Below are positions 1 to 64,000 of a stretch of 64,000 bases of DNA, one piece after another. Position numbers and translations under genes: made by a program. The first letter of the stretch is position 1. Each line of letters begins with the position of its first letter. The notes beneath the pieces were generated by a model that did no database searches, had not been told where the DNA came from, and saw nothing but the letters and a program-made list of their open reading frames with translations. Origin of the DNA: Octopus vulgaris (taxonomy: Eukaryota); NCBI GenBank assembly GCA_951406725.2, contig OX597817.1, positions 46,128,001-46,192,000 of the forward strand, written 5' to 3'.

Positions 1-80
1 CACCGCCCGGTCCAGGAATCGAAACCACAACTTTACGATCATGAGTCCAACACCCTAACCACTGAGTCACGCGTCTCCAC
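1..80 (-). mobile_element. tRNA-derived SINE head (family C), cut by window edge
   Basis: Reverse complement reads gacgcgtgactcagtggttagggtgttggactcatgatcg...tttcgattcc, with A-box-like and B-box-like motifs; homologous to 28155-28495 and 61950-62258. Confidence 0.7.
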
Positions 81-143: not shown

Positions 144-196
<53 letters not shown>

Positions 197-467
197 TTAA
201 TAAGGGTGAGGGAATTAGATACTAATTTAATAGTATATCTATTCAACACCAAGTGGCCTAGTGCTCCGAGAAACCTGGATTATTATAATATTTTATAATA
301 TATTATAATATTTTTACAAAATAAATATAAGAGAGTGGTCACTATATGGCTCACTCTAGCACCAGTTAATCCAAAAGGTTTCAACCACAAAAATACATGT
401 TTCCCATGAAAGTCAGTACGATTGTTAGCTCACACGGACAGGACAAATAAAAAATAACAAAAATACA

Positions 468-559
468 GATTATTTTGGGACAGTTGTTTCGCTATTAATG
501 AATTAAATGTAATTTTACTTACAAAAAAATCCACTTGTAGCTCGTCAGCCAAAACTATC
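468..559 (-). ncRNA. Type I hammerhead ribozyme, copy 1
   Basis: Minus strand: GAUAGUUUUGG-CUGACGA-GCUA...UAGC-GAAAC-AACU-GUC-CCAAAAUAAUC. The helix III loop is a variant (AACU), so it is not palindromic in this copy. Confidence 0.75.
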
Positions 560-1001
560 TGGATGAAATCCACTCAATCACACGCCAGATTTTACCATAA
601 CGATAAATACGCGTGTGGTTCAATTGATTACATCCGACGTTATAATTCAAATGCCCCAACTAACAGCGCGCCAAACTTTCACGGAAAACAAATACAGCAT
701 TTAGAAATAAATGCAGCATAATTATAATTAATTAATAAGGGTGAGAGAATTAGATACTAATTTAATAGTATATCTATTCAACACCAAGTGGCCTAGTGCT
801 CCGAGAAACCTGGATTATTATAATATTTTATAATATATTATAATATTTTTACAAAATAAATATAAGAGAGTGGTCACTATATGGCTCACTCTAGCACCAG
901 TTAATCCAAAAGGTTTCAACCACAAAAATACATGTTTCCCATGAAAGTCAGTACGATTGTTAGCTCACACGGACAGGCAAATAAAAAATAACAAAAATAC
1001 A

Positions 1002-1093
1002 GATTATTTTGGGACAATTGTTTCGCTATTAATGAATTAAATGTAATTTTACTTACAAAAAAATCCACTTGTAGCTCGTCAGCCAAAACTATC
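1002..1093 (-). ncRNA. Type I hammerhead ribozyme, copy 2
   Basis: Minus strand: full core CUGACGA/GAAA/GUC; helix I GAUAGUUUUGG:CCAAAAUAAUC; helix II GCUA:UAGC; palindromic minimal helix III ACAAUUGU. Confidence 0.85.
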
Positions 1094-1406
1094 TGGATGA
1101 AATCCACTCAATCACAAAAATATTATAATATATTATAAAATATTATAATAATCCAGGTTTCTCGGAGCACTAGACCACTTGGTGTTGAATAGATATACTA
1201 TTAAATTAGTATCTAATTCTCTCACCCTTATTAATTAATTATAATTATGCTGCATTTATTTGTAAATGCTGTATTTGTTTTCCGTGAAAGTTTGGCGCGC
1301 TGTTAGTTGGGGCATTTGAATTATAACGTCGGATGTAATCAATTGAACCACACGCGTATTTATCGTTATGGTAAAATCTGGCGTGTGATTGAGTGGATTT
1401 CATCCA

Positions 1407-1498
1407 GATAGTTTTGGCTGACGAGCTACAAGTGGATTTTTTTGTAAGTAAAATTACATTTAATTCATTAATAGCGAAACAATTGTCCCAAAATAATC
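1407..1498 (+). ncRNA. Type I hammerhead ribozyme, copy 3
   Basis: gatagttttgg (1407-1417), CTGACGA (1418-1424), gcta (1425-1428)...tagc (1472-1475), GAAAC aatt GTC (1476-1487), ccaaaataatc (1488-1498). Predicted cleavage after 1487. Confidence 0.85.
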
Positions 1499-1941
1499 TG
1501 TATTTTTGTTATTTTTTATTTGCCCTGTCCGTGTGAGCTAACAATCGTACTGACTTTCATGGGAAACATGTATTTTTGTGGTTGAAACCTTTTGGATTAA
1601 CTGGTGCTAGAGTGAGCCATATAGTGACCACTCTCTTATATTTATTTTGTAAAAATATTATAATATATTATAAAATATTATAATAATCCAGGTTTCTCGG
1701 AGCACTAGGCCACTTGGTGTTGAATAGATATACTATTAAATTAGTATCTAATTCTCTCACCCTTATTAATTAATTATAATTATGCTGCATTTATTTCTAA
1801 ATGCTGTATTTGTTTTCCGTGAAAGTTTGGCGCGCTGTTAGTTGGGGCATTTGAATTATAACGTCGGATGTAATCAATTGAACCACACGCGTATTTATCG
1901 TTATGGTAAAATCTGGCGTGTGATTGAGTGGATTTCATCCA

Positions 1942-2033
1942 GATAGTTTTGGCTGACGAGCTACAAGTGGATTTTTTTGTAAGTAAAATTACATTTAATT
2001 CATTAATAGCGAAACAATTGTCCCAAAATAATC
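1942..2033 (+). ncRNA. Type I hammerhead ribozyme, copy 4
   Basis: Same motif as copy 3, 535 nt downstream. Predicted cleavage after 2022. Confidence 0.85.
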
Positions 2034-2173
2034 TGTATTTTTGTTATTTTTTATTTGCCCTGTCCGTGTGAGCTAACAATCGTACTGACTTTCATGGGAA
2101 ACATGTATTTTTGTGGTTGAAACCTTTTGGATTAACTGGTGCTAGAGTGAGCCATATAGTGACCACTCTCTTA

Positions 2174-2223
<50 letters not shown>

Positions 2224-9305: not shown

Positions 9306-9854
9306 TTAGAGTATGTTTAGTTGTGGTCTGTATTTTTGAATAAGATTACTTTCCCTATTTATTCGAGTTTGGTCTGCGGTATTGTCCGAGCATTGGTATA
9401 GTGGGAAGACTAAGAATTTGGGGGACTTATTGTGTGCACAAAGGTCTAAGTGTCCACTTAGTGGTATCTGTCTTGTGGAGGGGTCCCTCAGTTGTTGTCG
9501 GTGAACTGTCATTCTTTCGCTGAGGGTAAGGCTCGTTTGCCCTATGTAGTCTTCGTGGAATCCTTCACACCTTATGACGTAGAGTAAATTTTTTGGTGCG
9601 CACGTGAAATTATTTTTTATAATGAATGTGTGTCCCGAGTGGAACTTGTACGTCGATCCCTCAATGAGGTGGATGCAAGTCCTGCAGTTGGGGCGACCAC
9701 ATTTTTTGATGGTGGGCGGTGGGTTTGTGTTGTGTAATTTTGCGTTGGTGAGGAGGTTTTTTAGGGATTTAGGTTGTCTCTTACTTTTTATTATTTTATG
9801 AGCTGCCAGTATTTTTTTCAGGCGTGGGTCTTGATTTAGTTGTGGAATGTTGTT
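9306..9854 (-). pseudogene. PLE GIY-YIG endonuclease domain with Cys-rich linker (open frame, 5'-truncated)
   Basis: KKCGRPNCRTC...FTCAPKNLLYVIRC...DYIGQTSLTLSERMTVHRQQ...RESNLIQKYRPQLN. The first 16 aa of the track ORF are microsatellite. Confidence 0.9.
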
Positions 9855-9876
9855 GTATATATATATATATATATAT

Positions 9877-10069
9877 AGCGAAAATTTACAAAAAATTGAC
9901 ATAGCAGGAGCGGCCCAGTCATAATTTTATTATATGTATATATACAGAGCGAAAATTTTCCCAAAAATTGACATAGCAGGAGAGGCCCAGTCAGAGTTTT
10001 ATTATATATATATATATATAACGATAATTTACAAAAAAATGACATAGCAGGAGCGGCCCAGTCAGAATT

Positions 10070-10152
<83 letters not shown>

Positions 10153-10506
10153 GCGAAAATTTACAAAAAATTGACATAGCAGGAAGCGGCCCAGTCAGAA
10201 TTTTATTATATATATATATATACATAGCGAAAATTTACAAAAAATTGACATAGCAGGAGCGGCCCAGTTAGAAGTTTACTATATATATATATATATATAC
10301 ATAGCGAAAATTTACAAAAAAATGACATAGCAGGAGCGGCCCAGTCAGAATTTTATTATATATATATATATATATACATAGCGAAAATTTACAAAAAAAA
10401 TTACAAATCAGGAGCGGCCCAGTCAGAATTTTATTATATATATAGCGAAAATTTACAAAAAATTGACATAGTAGGAGCGGCCCAGTTAGAATTTTCTTCA
10501 GGTCAA
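9877..10506. repeat. Eight ~58-bp units separated by (TA)n of variable length
   Basis: Unit tagcgaaaatttacaaaaaattgacatagcaggagcggcccagtcagaattttatt is the reverse complement of 6962-7030. Confidence 0.9.
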
Positions 10507-13200: not shown

Positions 13201-14488
13201 GTACTTTCTTTCTTGTGATCAAAGATTTGTCTTTGACGAAGTCGAAGTTGTTAAGGTACAAAGAACTCCATATGGAAGCAAGTAATATGGGAGGTCTGAT
13301 TGAAAAAACGGTAAACAGTGCGGAAGATATTGGTAAATATGAAAGATAACGCTTGCAACTTTGAATAGACTATAACAAATGCATTTACCAAAGACAAATG
13401 TGGTCTTATGTAAAAGATTCTATGCTAAATCACAGCAAACCTACAGAAAGAATAACCATTAAACAAACAACTACAACAATTCGTACACAGTTAATACTTC
13501 CTAGTGATAATAGAAAAAAGTATTGTTTCAAATGAATTCAGTTGAATAGAATACACGATCGAGGAAATTAGATAAAACATTAAAGCGATACAATTTACAC
13601 AATATAAAGGCAGACTGGAAATTAGTAGGATATCATACAACATCAGACAGAGAACCCCTTTATCAGGTACGTTAACCTCCTTTTAATAAATGACACGACC
13701 GCAAATATTTGGTATAGATATAACGGTTATGAAACCACTTATCCAATCTGCAAGTTGTGGTTGTAACAAATACTGCTGGTGTTGAAATAGAAATAAGACG
13801 ATATATGAGAGGAAAAGATAGGAAGCGAAATCTTACCAGAGGAAATTAATCCAAAGAACAAAAGTATCTGTATTACGTAAGGAGCAAGACATATAAAAAA
13901 ATACCATCCTAAACAAAAAAATGGAATGTTATACAGGAAACTGAAAATGAATGGCCGTCAGGGGAAAAGATGTATTTCCAAAAATGAAACCAAATATTTT
14001 ACCCATTCTAATGTTCTGAGAAAATAATCAAAATAATTATAAAGAATTTAACAGCAAAAATAATTAAAAAAAGAAATTTCTGGACAAATAGTACAAAGAT
14101 TATGGTTATGAGAAATGTGGGAACTGGAATAATTCCATGAATGAAATGAAACAAAAGCGTATAAAGATGAATCGAGTTTTAAAACGGAATGAAGAGATAT
14201 TAGGGAACAAGAAGGGAAAGCCATGGATTGTCATATCAGATGTAAAAACATTCTTGTCGTACGGGATGAAAAATCTACATGTATTCTTCAATATCATAGA
14301 ATTAAACGATTACACAAGTCAACACAGGCTTTCTGGCACATGGCTTATCAACGGTTTTTAGCTAATTTTGGTATGCTGGATCCAAATATGGCCTCCGATT
14401 TTCTCCATCACATCAGATTTTGGTGGTATAAAATATTTAATTTTGCTAGAAACAGCAATTTAATGTCCATAAAGAAAGAGTTAAACAT

Positions 14489-14633
14489 AGGCGTATGAGT
14501 TGCTGTGTGTTAAGTAGCTTGCTTACGAACCACCTGGTTCCGGGTTCAGTCACACTGCGTGACACTTTGGGCAAGTGTCTTCTACTATAGCCTCGGGACA
14601 ACCAAAGCATTGTGAGTGGATTTAGTAGACGTA

Positions 14634-14682
<49 letters not shown>

Positions 14683-14885
14683 ATGTTTGTATGTTTGGTA
14701 CCCACACATCGCTTGACAACCGATGCTGGTGTGTTTACGTCCCCTTAACTTAGTGGTTCGGCAAAAGAGACCGATGGAATAAGTACTAATCTTACAAAGA
14801 ATAAGTCCTGGGGTTGATTTGCTCGACTAAAGCCGGTGCTCCAGCATAGCCACAGTCAAATGACTGAAACAAATAAAAGAGTAAA
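14489..14885 (+). mobile_element. tRNA-derived SINE family A, near full length
   Basis: Head aggcgtatgagttgctgtgtg (A-box-like), ggttcagtc (B-box-like), internal (TA)n(TG)n, tail gactgaaacaaataaaagag. Confidence 0.85.
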
Positions 14886-17055: not shown

Positions 17056-17446
17056 TCTCTTTTCCTTGTTTCAGTCATTTGACTGCGGCCATGCTGGAGC
17101 ATCGCTTTTAGTCGAGCTTTTAGTCAACCCCAGAGCTTATTCTTTGTAAGCCTAGTACTTATTCTATCGGTCTCTTTTGCCAAACCGCTAAGTTACGGGG
17201 ACGTAAACACACCAGCATCGGTTGTCAAGTGCTGTTAGGGGGACAAACACAGACACAGAAACACATATATGCATATGCATATATACGACGAGCTTCTTTC
17301 AGTTTCCGTCTACCAAATCCCTTCACAAGGCTTTGGTCAGCCCGAGGATATAGTAGAAGACACTTGCTCAAGTTGCCCCGCAGTAGGACTGAACCCGGAA
17401 CCATGTGGTTGGTAAGCAAGCTACTTACCACACAGCCACTCCTGAC
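17056..17446 (-). mobile_element. SINE family A
   Basis: Full-length reverse copy. Confidence 0.85.
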
Positions 17447-18042
17447 TTTTCTTCACTATGCAAGCACAGATACCCAATTTATTAGCGTGATTATTACTAA
17501 CGTATCTCGAACGCTCTTCCTGGTCTCCTTCCCGCCACCAAACACGCAATCACGAACACACCCTCACGCACATGATAGAACATTATTACTCAATTTCTCT
17601 CCGCCTGAGTGATTGGAAAAACTTTATTCATAATCATATCATCACATTCCAACACACAATTACCCTGTTTGTTTTTTTCCCCCCTTTTTCTCCTCTCCTT
17701 AAGTTGCTACAACGACTTTTGCGCATCTGAAACTATATACTGCATACCAATTCCCTCAAATCAAATCTAAGCCTATTGTGTCTAGAAATGCATACCAGAT
17801 ATTTAATCAATGTTTCCGATCAATTCTCCAAAGAACTGCGGCACTATTGATTCTACTCCCTGATATTGTTTCTCCTAGAGACATTAACTTAGAATATTAA
17901 GCACAACATCATCCGCATCAAATCCCGACCCACCAATGGATCCTGTATATAGTCGATCGAATAAATGAAAGAACTGCTTAAAATTTACACTATCAGTCTA
18001 AAAAGCGGAGGACACTTTGGGTAATACAATCACTTGCCACTC

Positions 18043-22771: not shown

Positions 22772-24446
22772 CTCAAATTGCACCCGATTGTTGCAGGACC
22801 TGTATCTAGCACCCAAAAATTAAGCAACTTCTGGTCATAATTTTAAAATTATGTATATTGGCTCCCAGTTTCATCAGAGAGGACATGGACCTCTTAAGTC
22901 ATATCCCAGAACAGGCAGATAAAGAGATAGTAATAGTTAGCCTTTGATGTAATTAATCTCTACACAAATATTCCCCATATATATGGACTAGAAGCAGTAG
23001 AATTCTGGATAAATCAATGCCTACAGAGAATTCATCAGAAATTCTCCAAAGAATTTATACTTGATGGTTTACAGATAGTGCTGGAAAACAACTCCGTTTT
23101 CTTTGATAATCAATATTATCTACAAATACAAGGCACTACGATGGGGAAGAAAGTCGTACCAACATTTGCCACACTAGTTATGGGATAAGCAGAACAAATC
23201 TATACCCTCTCCAGAACTACTTTTGACCACCACTTTCAAACCTACCTTATAGGAAAAGATTCTTACATTTTGGGACCGAAATAAGGAGGACCTTTCAAAA
23301 TTTCTTAAATTAGTAAATAGCATACAAGTCTCAATATAATTCACTATGGAAATGAATAAAAATGAACTCCCCTTCTTGGACATCCTGATAATAATAAAAT
23401 GAGACACTTACAACTGACTTCTACTATAAAAACTCAGACACACACCACGATTTAGATTTTAGATCTAGCAGCCATTCCTATTCAAAAGGGAACGTACCAC
23501 TTAATATGGCAAACCGCATATGCTCAATAATCGCAGATACTGTTAAACGGAAGAAATGGCTGGCAAAACTTAATATATTTCTTCCTAACCAAAACTATCC
23601 TAACACGTTACTTCAACATGCTATAACTCAAGCAAATGAAAACCCGATCCCTACATTGCGGAGAAACACTCAGGCTAGGTGTGGAAATAAAAATTTAAAT
23701 ATTTCCTTTGTAGCAGCCCACAACCCTATAAAGCATAAGATTCTGAACTCAGCCAAACGATACCTCCTAATCAACAAATCTACTAAAAGTTTAAAAACCA
23801 CAAATTATCAACAGTCAATGACAACCACTTAATCTCACAAGATTCGTAACAAAGGTGAGATTCACACTTGAAAAAGAAACGATGTAAATAACCAAGTGTG
23901 GAGACCCTCGTTGTGGGACACGTTAATTAATGGAGCAAGGGTCAACCAAAAGACACAAAAATGGGAGGAATTAAAAGTGAATGCAAGCATAAATTGAAAA
24001 CCAAAAAAGACTTATCTACTGCATCTCATGCTCACAATGCAATGAAAAGTAGCTACATTGGGGAGACAGGAAAGAATGTGACCAGCCGTGTAAGTGTTCC
24101 TGAACAACAAATTAGGGATTCATCTCTTAGGAATGTCTCATGTAGTGAATATCTAGATAACCGTGCGAATGGAAAATTTTAAATATTCCCTTTTACAAAA
24201 TAAACGATGAAAATGTATTACTACGAAAGACAAATGAATAACTTATAAGAATTTTAAATAAGAAAACAAACCGAAAATAGCCCCCACTCCACACAATGTA
24301 CAACAAAGAATATTTAATGACTAAAAGCAAAAGTCGGAATATAAAACACACCAGAAAAAACTTCTCCAAAATGATCAGTAATATCGTCATTGAAGATATC
24401 ATTTTTTTTAAAGAATGATTTTTAAAAAATCAACTTTACAACTCAG
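22772..24446 (+). mobile_element. Decayed Penelope-like element (Neptune-like): RT, linker, GIY-YIG, 3' tail
   Basis: Frameshifted peptides HPIVAGPVSSTQKLS, PSFIREDMDLL, FDVINLYTNIP, YLQIQGTTMG, FTMEMNKNELPFLDIL, MANRICSII, KCGDPRCG, SYIGETGKNVTSR. Ends at (TA)n. Confidence 0.9.
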
Positions 24447-24512: not shown

Positions 24513-24559
<47 letters not shown>

Positions 24560-24673
24560 ATATTTCGGAATGGTCATATTGCCAGTTTAGCCAATAAAAA
24601 CACACGCACTATATATTTGGTGTTATTTTGCTTCAGTGATATTTATTTTTTACATTAATCTTAATCTTATTTC

Positions 24674-24718
24674 GGCCAAAGTTCTTTCGTCACACTCCTG
24701 TGACCGCATCAGTGGTCC
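24674..24718 (-). ncRNA. Degenerate minimal hammerhead-like motif in the PLE 3' tail
   Basis: GGACCA-CUGAUGC-G-GUCAC(AGGAGU)GUGAC-GAAA-GAACUU-UGGCC; the core deviates at A9. Confidence 0.45.
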
Positions 24719-25236
24719 TTTGTTTTCTTCTCACTTACTTGTGTCTCTCCTTACTAACCGTCAGCCATTTTGTATTTCTATTGTATGTCTTCATTTGCGC
24801 ATGCTTATATCTCTATGTGCGTCTATGTTTATTTAGTGTGTGGGGGGGATGTCTGTAATATTTGTATCTTCTGGTTATATACATTCTTGTAATTTGTATT
24901 TTGTTTTTGTTGTTGTTGCTTTTGTTCTAATTTTGTTCATGTGTTTACATCCACCCATTATTATCATTACATATGCTTGTATGTATGTATAACAACAATA
25001 TTAGTAATAATAATAATAAATCTAATCGAGAAAAAAAAAAAAAGAAAAAAAAAAAGAATATACATATACATATATATATATACATACATATACATATACA
25101 TATATATATATACATATATACACACACATATACACATATACATATACACATATATACACATATACATACACATAGATATTCATTTCTATTTCTTTAATTA
25201 CCTGTGTATTTATTATGTTTGCAGGATCCACTATTG

Positions 25237-25805
25237 TCATATGTTGTGGTGTGCGCTATTGCTCCATTCTAGTTTTCTATTCAGGCTAGGTTTATTTTCT
25301 ATTATATGTGTAGCTTCTGTAATTTGTCTAATTGTTGCATCTGTTCTATGTGTGGACAATATCTTAATCTCTATGTTATTGATTGATCCCCCGTGTTCTT
25401 GTTCGGCGTGTTGGTACAGAATCGATGAGCTTTTACCTTCCTTGAGTTGTCTCCAATGGTCATTCACCCGCTCACCAATGCTTCTTGCAGTTTCCCCTAC
25501 GTATGTTACTGTCTTGTTACTGCATCTTCCCTCTATACATCTTATACTATAGACCACATTTCTGGCTTTACAGTTCGTTTGTGGGCTAAATCTACATACA
25601 GTGCAATAGTTATCCGTACAGAGAGTTCTACTAAAAGGATAGGTTCTACCAATTATAGATCTGATAGGGTTGCCTGGCTTTTCAACAACCTTAATTCTTA
25701 GTTTAAGTTTATCTAGGGTCCTTCTAAAGCGGTACGCTAGTTCACCTCCAGGGGTGGTGTCAACGAACATGACACTCTGGTATTTATGGCTATCATACCA
25801 GAGTT
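25237..25805 (-). pseudogene. PLE linker and GIY-YIG endonuclease domain
   Basis: VVYSIRC...TYVGETARS...ITEATHI...PSLN in the ORF track. Confidence 0.9.
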
Positions 25806-26383
25806 GGCCTTCCTTATTTTCTTTTTTGTCCTTTCTATAGTGTTCCATGACTTGTTCCTATAGAGTGGGCAAATCCCATTCCTATCATTACATAATATAT
25901 TATCAAATTTCTTCATGGCTCCTTTGTATACTCTGATCCTTTCTTTATGGCTGTAACCTGAGAACTGCATGCGGTGAATGAAATACTGTATGTGTCTCTT
26001 TAATTCTGTAGGCTCGCACATGCGTGACACATTTCTCATTATTCTGACGAGGTCTGCCATCAAAATATTGAATTTGGCATTGCCCGCAATGGCTGAGTTC
26101 CGGTGGATCAGGTATTTTGAGGCCATAGGTTTTGCATAGTATGAATGAAGGATTTGGGTTTTATTTTTCACAATTTCTAGCCAGAGTTCAGTGTCTAGTA
26201 CTGGTAGTCTATGGTTGGGGTGTTTAGTGGGGTAGTCTATTGTGACCTTAATACTCTGGTGGATGGAGTTAGCTATTTGCTGGATGCTCTCCATAGTATT
26301 AGTTTCTATTACTATATCAACCGTACTCTCTTGTGGGGGTGCCTTTACTACTATATTGATATCATCAACAACATAGCGAGAAT
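25806..26383 (-). pseudogene. PLE reverse transcriptase C-terminal half/thumb
   Basis: ORF 25737-26294 plus the upstream YVVDD motif. Confidence 0.85.
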
Positions 26384-26422
26384 AAAGAATGCCTACTGCA
26401 GAAATCCATACTCGTAAACATG

Positions 26423-27662
26423 TACTCTCGCTATGTTGATGATATCAATATAGTAGTAAAGGCACCCCCACAAGAGAGTACGGTTGATATAGTAATAGAA
26501 ACTAATACTATGGAGAGCATCCAGCAAATAGCTAACTCCATCCACCAGAGTATTAAGGTCACAATATTAGCCCACAAACGAACTGTAAAGCCAGAAATGT
26601 GGTCTATAGTATAAGATGTATAGAGGGAAGATGCAGTAACAAGACAGTAACATACGTAGGGGAAACTGCAAGAAGCATTGGAGAGCGGGTGAATGAACAT
26701 TGGAGATAACTCAAGGAAGGTAAAAGCTCATCGATTCTGTACCAACACGCCGAACAAGAACACGGGGGATCAATCAATAACATAGAGATTAAGATATTGT
26801 CCACACATAGAACAGATGCAACAATTAGACAAATTACAGAAGCTACACATATAATAGAAAATAAACCTAGCCTGAATAGAAAACTAGAATGGAGCAATAG
26901 CGCACACCACAACATATGACAATAGTGGATCCTGCAAACATAATAAATACACAGGTAATTAAAGAAATAGAAATGAATATCTATGTGTATGTATATGTGT
27001 ATATATGTGTATATGTATATGTGTATATGTGTGTGTATATATGTATATATATATATGTATATGTATATGTATGTATATATATATATGTATATGTATATTC
27101 TTTTTTTTTTCTTTTTTTATTTTTTTTTTCTCGATTAGATTTATTATTATTATTACTAATATTGTTGTTATACATACATACAAGCATATGTAATGATAAT
27201 AATGGGTGGATGTAAACACATGAACAAAATTAGAACAAAAGCAACAACAACAAAAACAAAATACAAATTACAAGAATGTATATAACCAGAAGATACAAAT
27301 ATTACAGACATCCCCCCCCACACACTAAATAAACATAGACGCACATAGAGATATAAGCATGCGCAAATGAAGACATACAATAGAAATACAAAATGGCTGA
27401 CGGTTAGTAAGGAGAGACACAAGTAAGTGAGAAGAAAACAAAGGACCACTGATGCGGTCACAGGAGTGTGACGAAAGAACTTTGGCCGAAATAAGATTAA
27501 GATTAATGTAAAAAATAAATATCACTGAAGCAAAATAACACCAAATATATAGTGCGTGTGTTTTTATTGGCTAAACTGTCAATATGACCATTCCGAAATA
27601 TAACAATATCTGTTTCAACACACGACTTCACATAAAAAATCTTGCACAACAAATATTTAAAC

Positions 27663-28154: not shown

Positions 28155-28495
28155 TGTGAAGGCGCATGGCTGAGTGGTTTAAGCGCCGAGCTTACGATCG
28201 TGATATTGTGAGCTCGAATCACCGGGCTGCGTATTGTGTTCTTCAGTAAGACACTTTATTTTAAGTTGCTCCAGTTCCGTCAGCTATAGAAACGTGTTGC
28301 GACGTCACAGGTGCCAAGCTGTATCGGTCGTTTTGCATTTTGCTTGGATAACACTCGTGAGGTAGAGTGGTGAGGCCAGTATGCATGGGCGACTGCTAGT
28401 CTTCCATAAACAACCTTGCCAGGCTTGTGCCTAGGGGGCGGGGGGTAACTTTCTAGGAGCAAACCCATGGTCAGTCATGACCGAAGGGGTTCTCG
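28155..28495 (+). mobile_element. SINE family C, near full length
   Basis: tRNA-like head ggcgcatggctgagtggtttaag...gagctcgaatc; body homologous to 61950-62258. Confidence 0.75.
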
Positions 28496-28519
28496 GCATA
28501 TATATATATATATATATAT

Positions 28520-28600
28520 TTAAAATAAGGGTGAGAAATTAGATATTAATTTAATTAACATCGATTTCACAGCAGTGGTCTAACATAAAAAAAACTGAAG
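28520..28600 (-). repeat. Solo terminal fragment related to the end of the 535-bp monomer
   Basis: taagggtgagaaattagatattaatttaa versus taagggtgagagaattagatactaatttaa in the array; both abut (TA)n. Confidence 0.55.
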
Positions 28601-28626
28601 GTTTAGTAAAACTGTATTATATATAT

Positions 28627-28812
28627 ATTAGAGGGAAACCACTATGGGGACACCCATATGCTAGAAATAGATCCGCTACGGTCTCACCACTAAGAAATGT
28701 TCTCAAGAAAAATTTAGCAAAACAACCAAAACGTAATTGAGCAAGACAAAAGAAAAAGTAATAAAAATATGGATTATTCGTATACATATGGGTGTCTACA
28801 TAGTGGTTTCCC

Positions 28813-28818
<6 letters not shown>
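28627..28818. mobile_element. MITE-like element (~190 bp) with ~34-bp terminal inverted repeats, within (TA)n
   Basis: attagagggaaaccactatggggacacccatatg ... catatgggtgtctacatagtggtttccctctaat (2 mismatches). Confidence 0.75.
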
Positions 28819-31839: not shown

Positions 31840-32251
31840 CTATTTCTTTACTAAAGGGGCTAAACACAGAAAGGACAAACAAGGACAGACAAACAGATTA
31901 AGTCGATTATATCAACCCCAGTGCGTAAATGGTACTTATTTAATCGACCCCGAAAGGATGAAAGGCAAAATCGACCTAGGCGGAATTTGAACTCAGAACG
32001 TAACGGTAGACGAAATACCTATTTCTTTACTACCCACAAGGGGGTAAACACAGGGGGGACAAACAAGGACATACAACCGGATTAAGACGATCATATCGAT
32101 CCCAGTGCGTAACTGGTACTTATTTAATCGACCCCGAAGGGATGAAAGACAAAGTCGACCTCGGCGGGATTTGAACACAGAACGTAGCGGCAGAGGAAAT
32201 ACCGCTAAATATTTTGCCCGGCATGCTAACGATTCCGCCAGCTCGCTGCCT
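31840..32251 (-). mobile_element. Dimeric SINE family B (full unit plus head-truncated unit)
   Basis: Two bodies and tails joined at gaaatacc|tatttctttac near 32012-32030. Confidence 0.85.
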
Positions 32252-42465: not shown

Positions 42466-42881
42466 CTATTTCTTGATTGCCCACAAGGGGCTAAATATAG
42501 AGGCGACAAACAAGGACAGACAAACGGATTAAGTCGATTATATCGACCCCAATGCGTAAATGGTACTTATTTAATCGACCCCGAAAGGATGAAAGGCAAA
42601 GTCGACCTCGGCGGAATTTGAACTCAGAACGTAGCGGCAGTCGAAATACCTATTTGTTTACTATCCACAAGGGGCTAAACACAGAGGGGACAAACAAGGA
42701 CAGACAAACGGATTAAGTCGATTACATCGACCCCAGTGCGTAACTGGTACTTATTTAATCAACCTCGAAAGGATGAACGGCAAAGTTGACCTCGGCGGAA
42801 TTTGAACTCAGAGCGTAGCGGCAGACGAAATACCGCTAAGCATTTCGCCCGGCGTGCTAACGTTTCTGCCAGCTCGCCGCT
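42466..42881 (-). mobile_element. Dimeric SINE family B
   Basis: Same architecture and junction (gaaatacc|tatttgtttac near 42643-42660) as 31840-32251. Confidence 0.85.
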
Positions 42882-47574: not shown

Positions 47575-47794
47575 TACATATTTAATTGTTTCAGTCATTT
47601 GACTGAGGCCATGCTGGAGCATCGCCTTTAGTCGAGCAAATCGACCCCAGGATTTATTCTTTGTAAGCTTAGTATTTATTCTATCGCTGTCTTTTGCCGA
47701 ACTGCTAGGTTACGGGGACGCAAACACACTAGCATCGGTTGTCATGCGATGTTGAGGGACAAACACAGGCGCACACACACACACACATACATAA

Positions 47795-47856
<62 letters not shown>

Positions 47857-48038
47857 GTATATATATATATGTATATACGACAGGCTTGTTTTAGTTTCCG
47901 TCTACCAAATACACTCACAAGGCTTTGGTCAGCCCGAGGCTATAGCAGAAGACACTTGCCCAAGGTGCCACGCAGTGGGACTGAACCTGGAGCCATGTGG
48001 TTGGTATGCAACCTTCTTACTACACATCCACTCCTTCG
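47575..48038 (-). mobile_element. SINE family A
   Basis: Full-length reverse copy with an expanded internal microsatellite. Confidence 0.85.
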
Positions 48039-49645
48039 CCTTTGTATTTCCTGTTTCCTTCCTACCTTTATTTATCTATCTCTCTACTTTTCGTTATCGT
48101 TCTATTTTTCTTTCACAAAGAACTATGTATGGGTTGATGCACATGTGTGAGCAAAACCTTGGATCCTCATTTGCTGTGGGGAAATGCATACTATTTTTAT
48201 ATTTATCTTTTTATATATCGTGATTGTCTGTGTTTCTTGGGATCCGCACAAGCGATGTGCCAGGTCATTCTTTTTTAAGTTCTCTTTCTCAGTCTGCCTC
48301 GCTTTCTTTCCCCCTTTCAGGACTTCTTGAATAATAGTGGTCTTGTTATATGACCCTACCGTCACAACTTCTTCATCGTTGTGAGATCTTTGAGTACGCT
48401 CAGTTCGATGCTTGATGATTTTACTAACACGCTTATCCCTTGTGTAGTCCAAGTTTCAAGTGCTGAAGATGGTGCGATACCGTCTTATATCTAATGCCTG
48501 CGATCCCTACAGTGAGTGTCATACATATCTCATATGCCTACATGAAGACAGAAAGTACCAGAAGATATGGCAGTCTTTTATTTTTTGTCGATAGTGACGC
48601 TTTTTATCTCTACATATTGGTTTCGTTGCTGTTTAGTTCATTTAATGCAGTCGTTATCTGTGCAATTCTTGCAAGGATTTCATAACATGACAGTTAACAA
48701 TTGCTCCCATGAATTTTAAATTCGTACTTAAATTTATTTTTAAATCCTTTAATTCATTGTATACTTATTTAAACTTTTTGTTACCTCACCAATAATTATA
48801 ACGTGGTAAACAAAGTTCACTTAATATTAAGAAAGTTCCATAATCCTCTCCGTCATTCTCCCTTCCAAATGTCTTGTCTAATGATTAAAATTATTTACGA
48901 TATCTCGTTTCACCATCCACACTTATTCTAATTAGTACCCGGAAGACTTAACTAGTTTTAAATATTTCTGTCACTTTTCGGTTACTATCAAATTGTGCAT
49001 ATCATAAATTTATAATATAACATATTCTATTACCTTTACTTAATAATAATGTCCAATAATTTACATAATTTTCTTTGCAGTCACGCACTATTTTATTCGT
49101 TCCTGTTTCAAAACCATAAAATCACTATTTACATGCATGTGCGTAATTATAGAAAGGATTTCATACTAGTAGACTTCCTGTTGTTAAACTAAGACAGTCT
49201 TAACTATAACATCCTGAATTGTTGGTATTTATCTATGAATTACAACTATATGTCTAAATATTAGATGAGATGCCCACATCAGGCAACTGAAGGACAACAG
49301 ATGAAGAATCAGCGTGACGGAATTATAACAAGACAATGGAAAAGAGTAAGAGGCCGACCAAAGACTATCCAGAGACAGATAACAGTGGAAGAAATCCAGG
49401 GTGGGGTACTTCTTCAGGGAGGAAGATCTATTTCAGGTTGAGGATTTAGAATTCTATCTCCGGTTCCTAATTCTAATAAATTATTTTCTTTATTGTAGGT
49501 TATCGATGTTTACCTCCAAAATAAATATCACATCTAAGGGGATTTAATTTTACTCGACCTCATTCCTAAGAAGTTTTTTTTCGTTGAATTTGCAGATTAA
49601 TGTATATATTTCAGCAATAATTTCAACATTTTTTTACAAGCATTA

Positions 49646-62756: not shown

Positions 62757-62978
62757 ATACTTTTACTCTTTTAGTTGTTACAGTCATTTGACTGCGGCCA
62801 TGCTAGAGCACCGCCTTTAGTCGAGGAAATCAAACCCAGGACTTACTCTTTGTAAGCCTAGTACTTATTCTGTCGGTCTCTTTTGCCAAACCGCTAGGTT
62901 ACGGGGACGCAAACACACCAGCAGCGGTTGTCAAGCGATGTTGGTGGTGACAAACACAGACACACAAACATATACATA

Positions 62979-63041
<63 letters not shown>

Positions 63042-63211
63042 TATATACGACGGGCTTCTCCCAGTTTCGGTCTACCAAATCCACTCACAAGGCTTTGGTC
63101 GGCCCGAATCTATAGTAGAAGACATTTGCCCAAGGTGCCATGCAGTGGGACTGAACCCGGAACCATGTTGTTGGTAAGCCAGCTACTTACCATACAGCCA
63201 CTCCTACGCCT
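62757..63211 (-). mobile_element. SINE family A
   Basis: Full-length reverse copy with internal (TA)n. Confidence 0.85.
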
Positions 63212-64000
63212 ATCACAAAAATTACAAAAAAACAAAGATTTTTTCTTTTACTAAAATTTCGAACAATTACGTATATCGGTGTATGCGCATGTGTGTGCAT
63301 GCTCTGTGTGTGTGTGGGGGGGTGCATGAGAGAAAGAGAGAAAAGGACAGAGAGAGAGGGAGAGAAAAGACAGCCACAAACAGACAGACAGTTACATAGT
63401 AGGACAATGGTTGAGGGAAGTGAAGCATTATATTGTTAACATATGGGTGCATGTCGTTAGATTTCTGAGCAGCTAAGTAATTAAAGTAGAGAAAATCTTG
63501 TTTGGATGCGTTGTACCGCAATAAGACACAATGAGATTCTAAATCCTCTCTGGTGTAATAGATAATCGTTACATGATAGCTTTGAGCAAGGAGATTACCG
63601 ATTGGCTGTAATAAGTGATTTAGTGAACAAGCAGAGTGTTTTGTCCTGCCATGTATGGTCATAGAATTAACTGAGGTAAAAGGCAACCCAATTGCTTTGC
63701 GGAAGGTCAAAGAACATTAGTGTGTAATAAGAACCACGAAGAATCGCTCCAGTAAAAGTGGTGGGGATTGAGAATTACAAAAACAGCTCGTTCACTACAT
63801 TACTCTCCATAACTGTTGAAATGTTTCGAAATGAATCACATATTCTCATATTCTTTTATTCCTATATTCATATGGTCTAAGTCAGCAAGAGATTTTTAGG
63901 ATTTCAGTGGACATGAAAACTTAAGCAATCACGTACAAGTGCCGAGGAGCAAGAGATTTTGTTCATAAAAAGAACTCAGAGATGAACGAAATAACAGGTT

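What the first reader, a model, noticed from the sequence alone, without database searches (positions are those of the whole stretch)
191..2178. Young 535-bp retrozyme-like array with one hammerhead ribozyme per monomer (candidate circular RNA element)
Seen: an ORF-less 535-bp unit is repeated ~3.7 times with only a few differences. Each unit has a complete type I hammerhead core (CUGACGA, GAAA, GUC) with an 11-bp helix I (one mismatch, one wobble), spaced exactly one monomer apart; predicted cleavage after 1487 and 2022. Established: tandem hammerhead-bearing repeats in animals (non-LTR retrozymes, newt satellite 2, schistosome Sm-alpha) are transcribed, self-cleave to monomers, can circularise, and are thought to use PLE machinery. 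Inference: a read-through transcript would release a 535-nt RNA. That is longer than the roughly 170-400 nt I recall for metazoan retrozymes, and I do not recall a cephalopod example. I cannot verify novelty.
Basis: partly seen in the sequence, partly recalled or inferred. Interest (0 to 1): 0.92.

Follow-up and report, generated by a model that had tools for sequence, protein, structure and literature searches.

The report
Head-to-head hammerhead retrozyme insertion
A protein-less 535-base repeat carrying a self-cutting (hammerhead) RNA motif sits in a TA microsatellite as two blocks facing away from each other, the typical footprint of Penelope-like retrotransposon integration; it is a new example of a known kind of element (an animal retrozyme), not a new kind.

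Summary
The 535-bp repeat and its hammerhead motifs are real, but the array is not a plain direct tandem. It is two head-to-head blocks joined at base 1116. The left block (188-1116) is on the minus strand with 1.74 units; the right block (1116-2180) is on the plus strand with 1.99 units. Each block's 3' end abuts the same split (TA)n microsatellite, and the host flanks are unique. There are four complete type I hammerheads, two per strand. They are the only ones in the 64 kb, and chance expectation is 0.003-0.015 per window. Each has a full catalytic core, helix I of 6 bp extendable to 13, helix II of 4 bp plus a long extension, and a 2-bp helix III capped by a palindromic AAUU loop (ACAAUUGU), the dimer-capable metazoan architecture. 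Rfam models do not detect them. The monomer is ORF-less, 32% GC and strongly self-paired (z -6.6). A partial tandem, an inverted 5'-truncated copy and a (TA)n target are the published hallmarks of Penelope-like element (PLE) integration, and three PLE fragments lie in the same window. Best reading: a young non-LTR retrozyme copied from a multimeric or circular RNA by PLE machinery. A 535-nt unit is within the published range (51-972 bp). Cleavage, circular RNA, genome-wide copy number and host species are untested.

The parts
147..191 (.). Left half of the target (AT)n microsatellite (22.5 repeats). It overlaps the element end by about 4 nt of TA microhomology.
   Evidence: TRF; sequence
188..1116 (-). 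Left block, ribozyme-sense on the minus strand: monomer positions 432-535 (1116-1013), 1-535 (1012-479; 1-nt deletion at position 36, T>C at 531) and 1-291 (478-188). The 5'-truncated end is at the centre and the 3' end lies against (AT)n.
   Evidence: BLAST map; inverted repeats; copy differences
1000..1095 (-). Hammerhead A (minus strand): core CUGACGA 1082-1076, C17 at 1013, predicted cleavage between 1013 and 1012.
   Evidence: Descriptor scans
466..561 (-). Hammerhead B (minus strand): C3 at 548, C17 at 479, predicted cleavage between 479 and 478. Loop 3 is AACU instead of AAUU, which breaks the palindrome; the core is intact.
   Evidence: duplex energies
1116..1116 (.). Head-to-head junction. 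Minus-strand monomer position 432 is joined to plus-strand position 164 with a 1-nt overlap. The join is asymmetric, so it is not a simple fold-back.
1116..2180 (+). Right block, ribozyme-sense on the plus strand: monomer positions 164-535 (1116-1487), 1-535 (1488-2022) and 1-158 (2023-2180), which is two units minus 5 nt. The 3' end runs into (TA)n through the TA-like 'ttatatttat'.
1405..1500 (+). Hammerhead C (plus strand). Helix I pairs 1405-1417 with 1488-1500. Core CUGACGA is 1418-1424. The helix II base pairs 1425-1428 with 1472-1475 and carries a 43-nt structured extension. GAA is 1476-1478. Helix III is A1479-U1486 and C1480-G1485 with loop AAUU. C17 is 1487.
1940..2035 (+). Hammerhead D (plus strand), identical to C; C17 at 2022.
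1488..2022 (+). The one plus-strand monomer bounded by two ribozymes (535 nt). It is 32% GC. The predicted RNA is 68% paired, with MFE -153.9 kcal/mol against -110.8 +/- 6.5 for dinucleotide shuffles.
2172..2219 (.). Right half of the target (TA)n microsatellite (24 repeats).
   Evidence: TRF
28512..28612 (-). Diverged, 5'-truncated relative of the monomer, covering positions ~190-291. It ends at the same '...ctcacccttatt' 3' position directly against another (TA)n tract.
   Evidence: Local alignment score 116 against a shuffle mean of 47 and maximum of 69; sequence; hairpin retained

Best explanation
This is a young insertion of a non-autonomous, hammerhead-bearing retroelement (a metazoan non-LTR retrozyme) made by the integration machinery of a Penelope-like element (PLE). 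Shown: the anatomy. Two blocks of a 535-bp ORF-less unit lie head-to-head inside one (TA)n microsatellite. Each block is longer than one unit, is 5'-truncated at a different point in the centre (positions 432 and 164), and has its RNA-sense 3' end outward against the TA tract. Each unit junction carries a complete type I hammerhead. Inferred mechanism: a GIY-YIG endonuclease of a (TA)n-targeting PLE nicked both strands of the microsatellite. Each 3'-OH then primed reverse transcription on an AU-rich stretch of retrozyme RNA (3' ends at positions 291 and ~158, both with TA microhomology). Because each cDNA spans 1.7-2 units, the template was either an uncleaved multimeric transcript or a circular monomer copied by rolling-circle reverse transcription. 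The two cDNAs were then joined at 1116. Inferred life cycle: sense transcripts self-cleave after GUC (1487/2022 on +, 1013/479 on -), probably helped by pairing of two ribozymes through the 8-nt palindrome ACAAUUGU. [quoted passage not shown]
For: Geometry: inverted blocks, junction at 1116; unique flanks; TA tracts at 147-191 and 2172-2219. Youth and a single source: only 6 private differences and no block-specific variants. Ribozyme: all invariant core positions are present, with G10.1-C11.1, A15.1-U16.1 and C17. Helix I has 6 bp then an irregularity, helix II has 4 bp then an internal loop, and helix III has 2 bp plus a palindromic tetraloop. This is the 'canonical metazoan type I' layout in Cervera & de la Pena 2014 (PMC4209133). 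Chance is 0.015 and 0.003 per 64 kb. RNAfold recovers helices I and II with z -5.9. The helix III self-duplex is -7.8 kcal/mol. Retrozyme traits: no ORF, 32% GC, and a strongly self-paired monomer with z -6.6. These match Cervera & de la Pena 2020 (PMC7229834) and the review PMC7761336. [quoted passage not shown] (TA)n targets are reported for Naiad and for nearly all families of the hammerhead-bearing Hydra clade, and the Cys-rich EN linker (as in Neptune) is hypothesised to mediate such bias (PMC8557442). PLEs are present locally: GIY-YIG ORFs with a C-x4-C-x2-C linker plus RT pieces. Independent example: external locus L001 has two 5'-truncated PLE copies head-to-head with unique flanks, a minimal hammerhead at each outer 3' end, and an AT-rich microsatellite at one end. 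A second, diverged family member in the window ends at the same 3' position against (TA)n. That shows dispersal and a recurrent 3' junction.
Against: No Rfam hammerhead model matches, even at E<=10. This is plausibly due to the 43-nt helix II extension, and Rfam also missed the textbook minimal PLE hammerheads in L001 and L002. It still means there is no model-based support. No homologous copies from other loci or genomes were found, so there is no covariation evidence for the ribozyme. The four copies count as one observation. The hammerhead-consistent fold lies 5.6 kcal/mol above the MFE, which pairs core nucleotides GACGA with UUGUC. Loop-loop tertiary contacts cannot be assessed. The two blocks have different 3' ends (positions 291 and ~158), which a single defined linear template would not give. 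No similarity was found between the monomer and the PLE copies in the window or in L001/L002, so the autonomous partner is unidentified. The 30-40-bp PLE 'tail' was not recognised. Cleavage, transcription and circular RNA are all untested.
Confidence: 0.75

Rival explanations
1. The inversion is an assembly or sequencing artefact (a chimeric or fold-back long read), and the real locus is a simple direct tandem of about 2-4 units.
For: The same window has a near-perfect 3-kb palindrome (24552-27609) in which about 480 bp of non-repeat host flank on each side is inverted at 100% identity. This looks like a fold-back artefact or a true inverted duplication, so this assembly does contain suspicious palindromes.
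Against: The 1116 junction is asymmetric (position 432 joined to 164), not X followed by its own reverse complement. The host flanks of the array are unique and not inverted. Both outer ends lie in one microsatellite. The same head-to-head architecture with unique flanks occurs for a PLE in an unrelated assembly (L001) and is described as typical of PLEs.
Confidence: 0.08
2. It is an ordinary minisatellite or inverted duplication whose hammerhead-like motif is a chance match with no catalytic role.
For: No Rfam hit. No covariation data. A competing non-catalytic fold is more stable by 5.6 kcal/mol. With a relaxed descriptor, a genome of several gigabases would hold many chance motifs, extrapolating from 0.015 per 64 kb.
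Against: The motif meets every core and helix requirement, including the palindromic loop 3; chance is 0.003 per 64 kb, and 0 of 300 simulations with helix I >= 6 bp. It sits exactly once per unit in an ORF-less, AT-rich, highly self-paired tandem unit. That unit is inserted in (TA)n with the PLE signature. These are independent features, and the retrozyme model predicts all of them.
Confidence: 0.07
3. The repeat is only the pseudo-LTR or terminal portion of an ordinary full-length autonomous PLE, with no independent amplification.
For: PLE pseudo-LTRs carry hammerheads and arise from partial tandems. PLE fragments are abundant in the window. Vertebrate retrozymes are sister to PLE pLTRs.
Against: Complete 535->1 unit junctions occur four times with a 535-bp period, and there is no ORF between ribozymes. 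A PLE partial tandem would have a period of several kb. There is no sequence similarity to the PLE copies in the window or in L001/L002. The ribozyme has the canonical type I form (2-bp helix III plus tetraloop), not the minimal form found at the 3' ends of the related PLEs. A separate diverged fragment exists at 28.5 kb.
Confidence: 0.05
4. The locus functions mainly as a long inverted repeat. Read-through transcription gives a ~930-bp double-stranded hairpin RNA that feeds small-RNA (siRNA/piRNA) silencing of the family. This is compatible with a retrozyme origin.
For: The arms are 99-100% complementary over >900 nt. Rfam's only significant hits in the region are hairpin-type miRNA models that match the palindrome (MIR6217, E 7e-06, far below its gathering score).
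Against: There is no evidence of transcription or small RNAs. The hairpin follows from the PLE insertion geometry and needs no selection. The miRNA-model hits are generic long-hairpin or AT-repeat matches.
Confidence: 0.05

Closest known systems
Metazoan non-LTR retrozymes (coral, mussel and axolotl repeats with type I hammerheads; Cervera & de la Pena 2020, PMC7229834; Li, Clavereau & Pollet 2026 preprint, 10.64898/2026.07.22.740005)
   Same: Head-to-tail repeats of a few hundred bp with one type I hammerhead per unit. No ORF, LTR, PBS or PPT. Low GC (32%). Strongly self-paired monomer RNA. Co-occurrence with PLEs. Unit length inside the reported 51-972 bp range.
   Different: Helix II carries a 43-nt structured extension beyond its 4-bp base, so Rfam models fail. 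The insertion is two inverted blocks in a (TA)n tract, a layout that neither retrozyme paper mentions in my term searches. Expression and circular RNA are unknown here. No cephalopod case turned up in the searchable literature, and the host was not verified.
Newt satellite 2 / axolotl HHR_Amex1-2 and other dimer-dependent type I hammerheads (Forster et al. 1988, as cited in PMC4209133 and PMC7761336)
   Same: A weak helix III (1-2 bp) capped by a palindromic tetraloop, so two ribozymes in a tandem transcript can form an extended helix III. Here ACAAUUGU gives 8 bp at -7.8 kcal/mol.
   Different: A 535-bp unit against ~330-350 bp. Helix I is much longer (13 positions) and helix II is extended. 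Dimer dependence is only predicted.
Penelope-like elements with pseudo-LTR hammerheads and microsatellite targeting (Neptune, Hydra and Naiad clades; Craig et al. 2021, PMC8557442; Cervera & de la Pena 2014, PMC4209133)
   Same: The insertion architecture (partial tandem, adjacent inverted 5'-truncated copy, variable 5' truncation), the (TA)n target, and a hammerhead in the repeated part. The same geometry is seen directly in external locus L001.
   Different: No RT or GIY-YIG ORF, and a 535-bp period instead of about 3 kb. The ribozyme is of the canonical rather than the minimal type. There is no detectable sequence similarity to the PLE copies examined.
L1 twin-priming inversions (recalled from memory: Ostertag & Kazazian 2001; not checked here)
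   Same: Both nicked target strands prime reverse transcription, giving inverted segments joined internally with little microhomology.
   Different: In twin priming the two segments cover different parts of one RNA. Here both blocks contain the same sequence more than once, and each exceeds one unit.

Membership tests
Hammerhead ribozyme, type I (canonical metazoan form) | Invariant core: C3 U4 G5 A6 N7 G8 A9, G12 A13 A14, the A15.1-U16.1 pair, and H17 (not G) before the cleavage site | tested here: met
   CUGACGA 1418-1424, GAA 1476-1478, A1479-U1486, C1487. The same is found in all four copies.
Hammerhead ribozyme, type I (canonical metazoan form) | Three helices around the core, with helix I open and helices II and III closed (type I topology), and a G10.1-C11.1 pair | tested here: met
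   Helix I has 13 positions (11 WC, 1 GU, 1 mismatch). The helix II base is GCUA/UAGC and is closed by a structured hairpin. Helix III is closed by AAUU.
Hammerhead ribozyme, type I (canonical metazoan form) | Short helix III (1-2 bp) capped by a small palindromic loop that allows a dimeric ribozyme (PMC4209133) | tested here: met
   ACAAUUGU is a perfect 8-nt palindrome with a self-duplex of -7.8 kcal/mol. One copy (C17 at 479) has AACU.
Hammerhead ribozyme, type I (canonical metazoan form) | Match to a curated covariance model (Rfam hammerhead families) | tested here: not met
   No hammerhead hit at gathering score or at E<=10 on 1-2400. The same search missed textbook minimal PLE hammerheads in L001 and L002, so its sensitivity for such variants is poor.
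Hammerhead ribozyme, type I (canonical metazoan form) | Covariation in the helices across homologues | not testable with these tools
   No homologous ribozyme copies outside the array were found. The four local copies are near-identical.
Hammerhead ribozyme, type I (canonical metazoan form) | Site-specific Mg2+-dependent self-cleavage | not testable with these tools
   Needs in vitro transcription. The thermodynamic model shows a competing fold 5.6 kcal/mol more stable than the hammerhead-consistent one.
Metazoan non-LTR retrozyme | [quoted passage not shown] | tested here: met
   535-bp period and four complete unit junctions, each with a hammerhead. This meets the 2026 preprint's 'active' definition (a hammerhead in all repeats) within each block.
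Metazoan non-LTR retrozyme | Non-coding, with low GC (<45-50%) | tested here: met
   The longest open stretch is 87 codons and has no homologue. GC is 32%.
Metazoan non-LTR retrozyme | Monomer RNA predicted to be stable and highly self-paired | tested here: met
   MFE -153.9 kcal/mol, z -6.6, 68% paired. The antisense strand also has z -5.4, so the strand asymmetry is mostly compositional.
Metazoan non-LTR retrozyme | Dispersed multi-copy family in the genome | tested here: inconclusive
   One diverged, truncated relative lies 26 kb away. The source genome could not be searched.
Metazoan non-LTR retrozyme | Expressed as linear and circular monomer RNAs | not testable with these tools
   No transcript data are available.
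Metazoan non-LTR retrozyme | Co-occurrence with PLEs in the same genome | tested here: met
   At least three PLE fragments are in the window: Pfam GIY-YIG at 9306-9902 and 25237-25848, and RT motifs at 22937-23185 and 25740-26444.
PLE-type integration product | Partial tandem plus an immediately adjacent inverted 5'-truncated copy (PMC8557442) | tested here: met
   Left block on the minus strand and right block on the plus strand, with different 5' truncation points meeting at 1116.
PLE-type integration product | Insertion into a microsatellite, (TA)n for the Naiad and Hydra clades | tested here: met
   (AT)22 at 147-191 and (TA)24 at 2172-2219 flank the element, and the outer flanks are unique. 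The 28.5-kb relative also abuts (TA)n.
PLE-type integration product | Encodes RT and a GIY-YIG endonuclease (autonomous PLE) | tested here: not met
   There is no ORF in the unit. It is therefore filed as non-autonomous, not as a PLE.
PLE-type integration product | A 30-40-bp 'tail' extension at one end | tested here: inconclusive
   No tail was recognisable. The ends dissolve into TA microhomology.

The most novel reading that the evidence does not exclude
This locus preserves the product of a PLE-type, double-strand-primed reverse transcription of a circular (or multimeric) hammerhead RNA into a (TA)n target. There are two cDNAs of 1.7 and 2.0 units with different, AU-rich priming sites (positions 291 and ~158), joined head-to-head. 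If this is general for the family, it would be direct structural evidence for two things. First, that animal retrozymes are integrated by (TA)n-targeting GIY-YIG PLE machinery. Second, that priming can start at internal AU-rich sites, as expected for a circular template rather than a linear RNA with a fixed 3' end. It would also define a retrozyme lineage with an extended helix II that current covariance models miss.
Probability: 0.35. Interest if true: 0.6.

Novelty: new member of a known kind. Interest (0 to 1): 0.45.

Why it matters
It is still inferred rather than shown which machinery mobilises animal retrozymes. The inference rests on co-occurrence with PLEs and on pLTR phylogeny. A young, barely mutated insertion combines a canonical type I hammerhead repeat with the PLE-specific insertion footprint: an inverted 5'-truncated copy and a (TA)n target. 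That gives a concrete, testable link between the two. If more insertions of the family can be collected, they would allow a test of circular against linear templates. The locus also shows that hammerheads with long helix II extensions escape Rfam-based annotation. Beyond that, it is an expected kind of element in an invertebrate genome that carries PLEs.

Tried and rejected
1. Rfam at gathering score on the whole window and at E<=10 on 1-2400 gave no hammerhead. The only hits were hairpin and AT-repeat miRNA models well below their thresholds, which I treated as artefacts of the palindrome and the TA tracts.
2. TRF cannot see the 535-bp period because its limit here is 500.
3. I looked for external copies four ways: two metagenome pattern scans, a viral-contig scan, an exact look-up of the 52-aa spurious ORF, and a protein word search with the 87-codon open stretch. 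All were empty, and no eukaryotic DNA collection is searchable by nucleotide.
4. I first read the sense/antisense folding asymmetry (-150.7 against -110.8 kcal/mol) as evidence for strand-specific RNA selection. I dropped this when dinucleotide-shuffle z-scores proved similar, at -6.6 and -5.4.
5. A relaxed minimal-hammerhead scan of the window's own PLE fragments found none. BLAST of the monomer against those PLEs and against L001/L002 found no similarity, so no autonomous partner was identified.
6. The host organism was not established. PLE relatives (46-57% identity) lie on unnamed ENA contigs.
7. The 'TAAGGGTGAG' at the left element end resembles 'TAAGGTGAG' in the right flank (family D2). 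I considered it as a target-site duplication and set it aside as a probable chance match.
8. A hairpin at monomer positions ~235-267 is retained in the diverged 28.5-kb fragment, possibly with one C-G to U-A change. With only two sequences and an indel, this is too weak to count.
Full report
**What is in the sequence**

Between two halves of a TA microsatellite lies 1,993 bp (188-2180) made of one 535-bp unit. The microsatellite halves are (AT)22.5 at 147-191 and (TA)24 at 2172-2219. I define the monomer as 1488-2022, starting after the predicted cleavage site.

BLAST of the monomer against the window and the repeat finder show that the array is not one direct tandem. It is two blocks in opposite orientation.

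- Right block (1116-2180, + strand): monomer positions 164-535, 1-535 and 1-158. This is two units minus 5 nt.
- Left block (188-1116, - strand): monomer positions 432-535, 1-535 and 1-291, or 1.74 units.

The blocks meet head-to-head at base 1116 with a 1-nt overlap. Their RNA-sense 3' ends point outward and merge into the TA tracts through short TA-like microhomology. DNA outside the TA tracts is unique and not inverted.

The copies differ by six private changes only, five substitutions and one 1-nt deletion. No variant distinguishes one block from the other. So this is one young event from one template sequence. TRF did not list the repeat because its period limit in this tool is 500.

**The ribozyme**

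Each unit junction carries a complete type I hammerhead. For the copy at 1405-1500:

| Element | Coordinates and content |
|---|---|
| Helix I | 1405-1417 pairs with 1488-1500 (11 Watson-Crick pairs, one G-U, one A-A) |
| Core | CUGACGA at 1418-1424 |
| Helix II | Begins GCUA/UAGC (G10.1-C11.1), continues after a 2x2 internal loop into a long imperfect hairpin |
| GAA | 1476-1478 |
| Helix III | A1479-U1486 and C1480-G1485, closed by AAUU |
| C17 | 1487 |

The irregularities fall where the canonical metazoan design has its loops, after 6 bp in helix I and after 4 bp in helix II. Helix III is the short stem with a palindromic loop that Cervera & de la Pena 2014 describe as typical and dimer-prone (PMC4209133). 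ACAAUUGU is a perfect palindrome, and two ribozymes could form an 8-bp helix III at -7.8 kcal/mol.

My descriptor scans find exactly four such motifs in the 64 kb, all in the array. C17 lies at 1487 and 2022 on the + strand and at 1013 and 479 on the - strand. Composition-matched random sequence gives 0.015 per window. It gives 0.003 per window when a palindromic helix III is required, and none in 300 simulations with helix I >= 6 bp as well. The copy at 479 has AACU in loop 3.

RNAfold recovers helices I and II (z -5.9). It also prefers to pair GACGA with UUGUC, which puts the hammerhead-consistent fold 5.6 kcal/mol above the MFE.

Rfam gives no hammerhead hit at gathering score or at E<=10. 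I take this as absence of support rather than as refutation, for two reasons. The 43-nt helix II extension is foreign to the models. The same search also missed two textbook minimal PLE hammerheads in external loci.

**The unit as an RNA**

The monomer has no ORF. The longest open stretch is 87 codons and has no homologue in 5.8 billion proteins. It is 32% GC and predicted to be 68% paired. Its MFE is -153.9 kcal/mol against -110.8 +/- 6.5 for dinucleotide shuffles (z -6.6). The antisense strand is also more structured than its shuffles (z -5.4). The raw energy gap between the strands is therefore mostly compositional, and I do not use it as evidence.

**Context and comparison with PLE biology**

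The window holds at least three PLE fragments:

- RT and GIY-YIG pieces at 22937-24179 (+).
- RT thumb and GIY-YIG at 25240-26444 (-).
- GIY-YIG at 9309-9926 (-).

Both intact endonuclease ORFs have a C-x4-C-x2-C motif upstream of the GIY-YIG domain.

Craig et al. 2021 (PMC8557442) make several relevant statements:

- Naiad elements prefer (TA)n, and the same Cys-rich linker was earlier hypothesised to give Neptune elements a microsatellite bias.
- The Hydra clade, found also in molluscs, has canonical hammerheads.
- Almost all Hydra families insert into (TA)n.

An external relative of the window's PLE shows the geometry directly. This is L001, on an unnamed 4.5-Mb ENA contig. Two 5'-truncated copies lie head-to-head with arms of about 1.3 kb and a 15-nt spacer. 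The flanks are unique, each outer 3' end carries a minimal hammerhead, and one end runs into an AT-rich microsatellite.

The array has this same footprint with a 535-bp non-coding unit in place of a 3-kb coding one.

A second, diverged and 5'-truncated member of the family lies at about 28512-28612 (-). It ends at the same '...ctcacccttatt' position (monomer ~291) directly against another (TA)n tract. So the family is dispersed and this 3' junction recurs.

**Mechanism**

Shown: the anatomy described above.

Inferred integration:
1. A PLE endonuclease nicked both strands of the (TA)n tract.
2. Each 3'-OH primed reverse transcription on AU-rich stretches of the retrozyme RNA, at positions 291 and ~158.
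3. The two cDNAs grew toward each other and were joined at 1116.

Each cDNA exceeds one unit, so the template was either an uncleaved multimer or a circular monomer copied by rolling circle. The latter is the model proposed for retrozymes (PMC7761336). The two different 3' start points fit internal priming on a circle or a multimer better than a linear RNA with one fixed end.

Inferred life cycle: sense transcripts cleave after GUC, probably aided by dimerisation. They release a 535-nt RNA (1488-2022) or a 534-nt RNA (1012-479), which a host ligase can circularise, as shown experimentally for coral, mussel and axolotl elements (PMC7229834).

A transcript crossing the whole locus would instead fold into a hairpin of about 930 bp. 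That is a possible source of small RNAs, but it needs no selection to exist.

**Rivals**

- Assembly fold-back. This was worth considering because the window contains a near-perfect palindrome at 24552-27609 that includes inverted host flanks. The 1116 junction, however, is asymmetric and the array's flanks are unique.
- Chance motif in a satellite. This is unlikely given the descriptor statistics and four independent retrozyme or PLE features.
- Pseudo-LTR of a full-length PLE. The 535-bp period without any ORF excludes this for the present locus.

**Novelty**

Non-LTR retrozymes are known across metazoans, including a mollusc. The link to PLEs was proposed in 2020 and supported phylogenetically in 2026. 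Unit lengths of 51-972 bp are reported, so 535 nt is not exceptional.

In the searchable literature, only four papers hold both 'hammerhead ribozyme' and 'cephalopod' (two listed, neither reporting a cephalopod retrozyme), and the combined retrozyme-plus-cephalopod-terms query was not conclusive. I could not verify that the window is cephalopod.

What the locus adds is a clean example of a retrozyme insertion carrying the PLE-specific footprint and a (TA)n target. My term searches of the two retrozyme papers turned up no mention of these features in retrozyme insertions. It also shows a hammerhead variant with an extended helix II that escapes Rfam.

I rate it a new member of a known kind and moderately interesting.

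Noticed in passing
window 24552-27609: A near-perfect 3-kb palindrome centred near 26402. Arms 24552-25589 and 26567-27609 are 99-100% complementary. They include a PLE 3' part, an (ATATAC)n tract and about 480 bp of non-repeat host flank on each side. The left arm has an extra 25590-26237. Because the flanks are inverted too, this is either a real inverted duplication or an assembly fold-back, not a simple PLE insertion.
   Followed up: partly
window 9309-9926(-), 22937-24179(+), 25240-26444(-): Three Penelope-like element fragments. The GIY-YIG endonuclease ORFs are supported by Pfam PF01541 and carry a C-x4-C-x2-C linker; RT motif pieces are also present. All end at or near microsatellites: (AC)n, (TA)n and (ATATAC)n. 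No hammerhead was detected in these copies.
   Followed up: partly
L001 6603-9320 and L002 9751-9782 (unnamed ENA eukaryotic contigs): Relatives of the window's PLE carry textbook minimal hammerheads right at the ORF 3' end: CUGAnGA plus one extra nucleotide, a 6-bp GC-rich helix II, GAAA and an AU palindrome. In L001 two copies lie head-to-head with a 15-nt spacer. Rfam did not report these ribozymes at E<=0.1.
   Followed up: yes
window 28625-28815: A MITE-like fold-back element of about 190 bp with terminal inverted repeats (TAGAGGGAAACCACTATG...). It is inserted in a (TA)n tract next to the truncated retrozyme relative.
   Followed up: no
window 1-80(-), 28190-28500(-), and many others (e.g. 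14449-14826, 17124-17609, 47632-48147, 62821-63251): Numerous copies of a tRNA-derived SINE, usually adjacent to microsatellites. They show up as the recurring translated motif '...RLPNPLTRLWSARGYSRRHLPKVPRSGTEPG...'.
   Followed up: no
window 31854-32203 and 42481-42834; 10129-10495: Two 1.9-copy tandems of a 184-bp unit at two loci 10 kb apart (87-92% matches), and a 77-bp tandem of 4.1 copies next to (TA)n. None carries a hammerhead motif by my descriptors.
   Followed up: no
window 779-1187: The Rfam MIR6217 model matches at E 7e-06 (37 bits against a gathering score of 110). This is only because the head-to-head junction forms a long hairpin. It is a false family assignment that an automated annotation could make.
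   Followed up: yes
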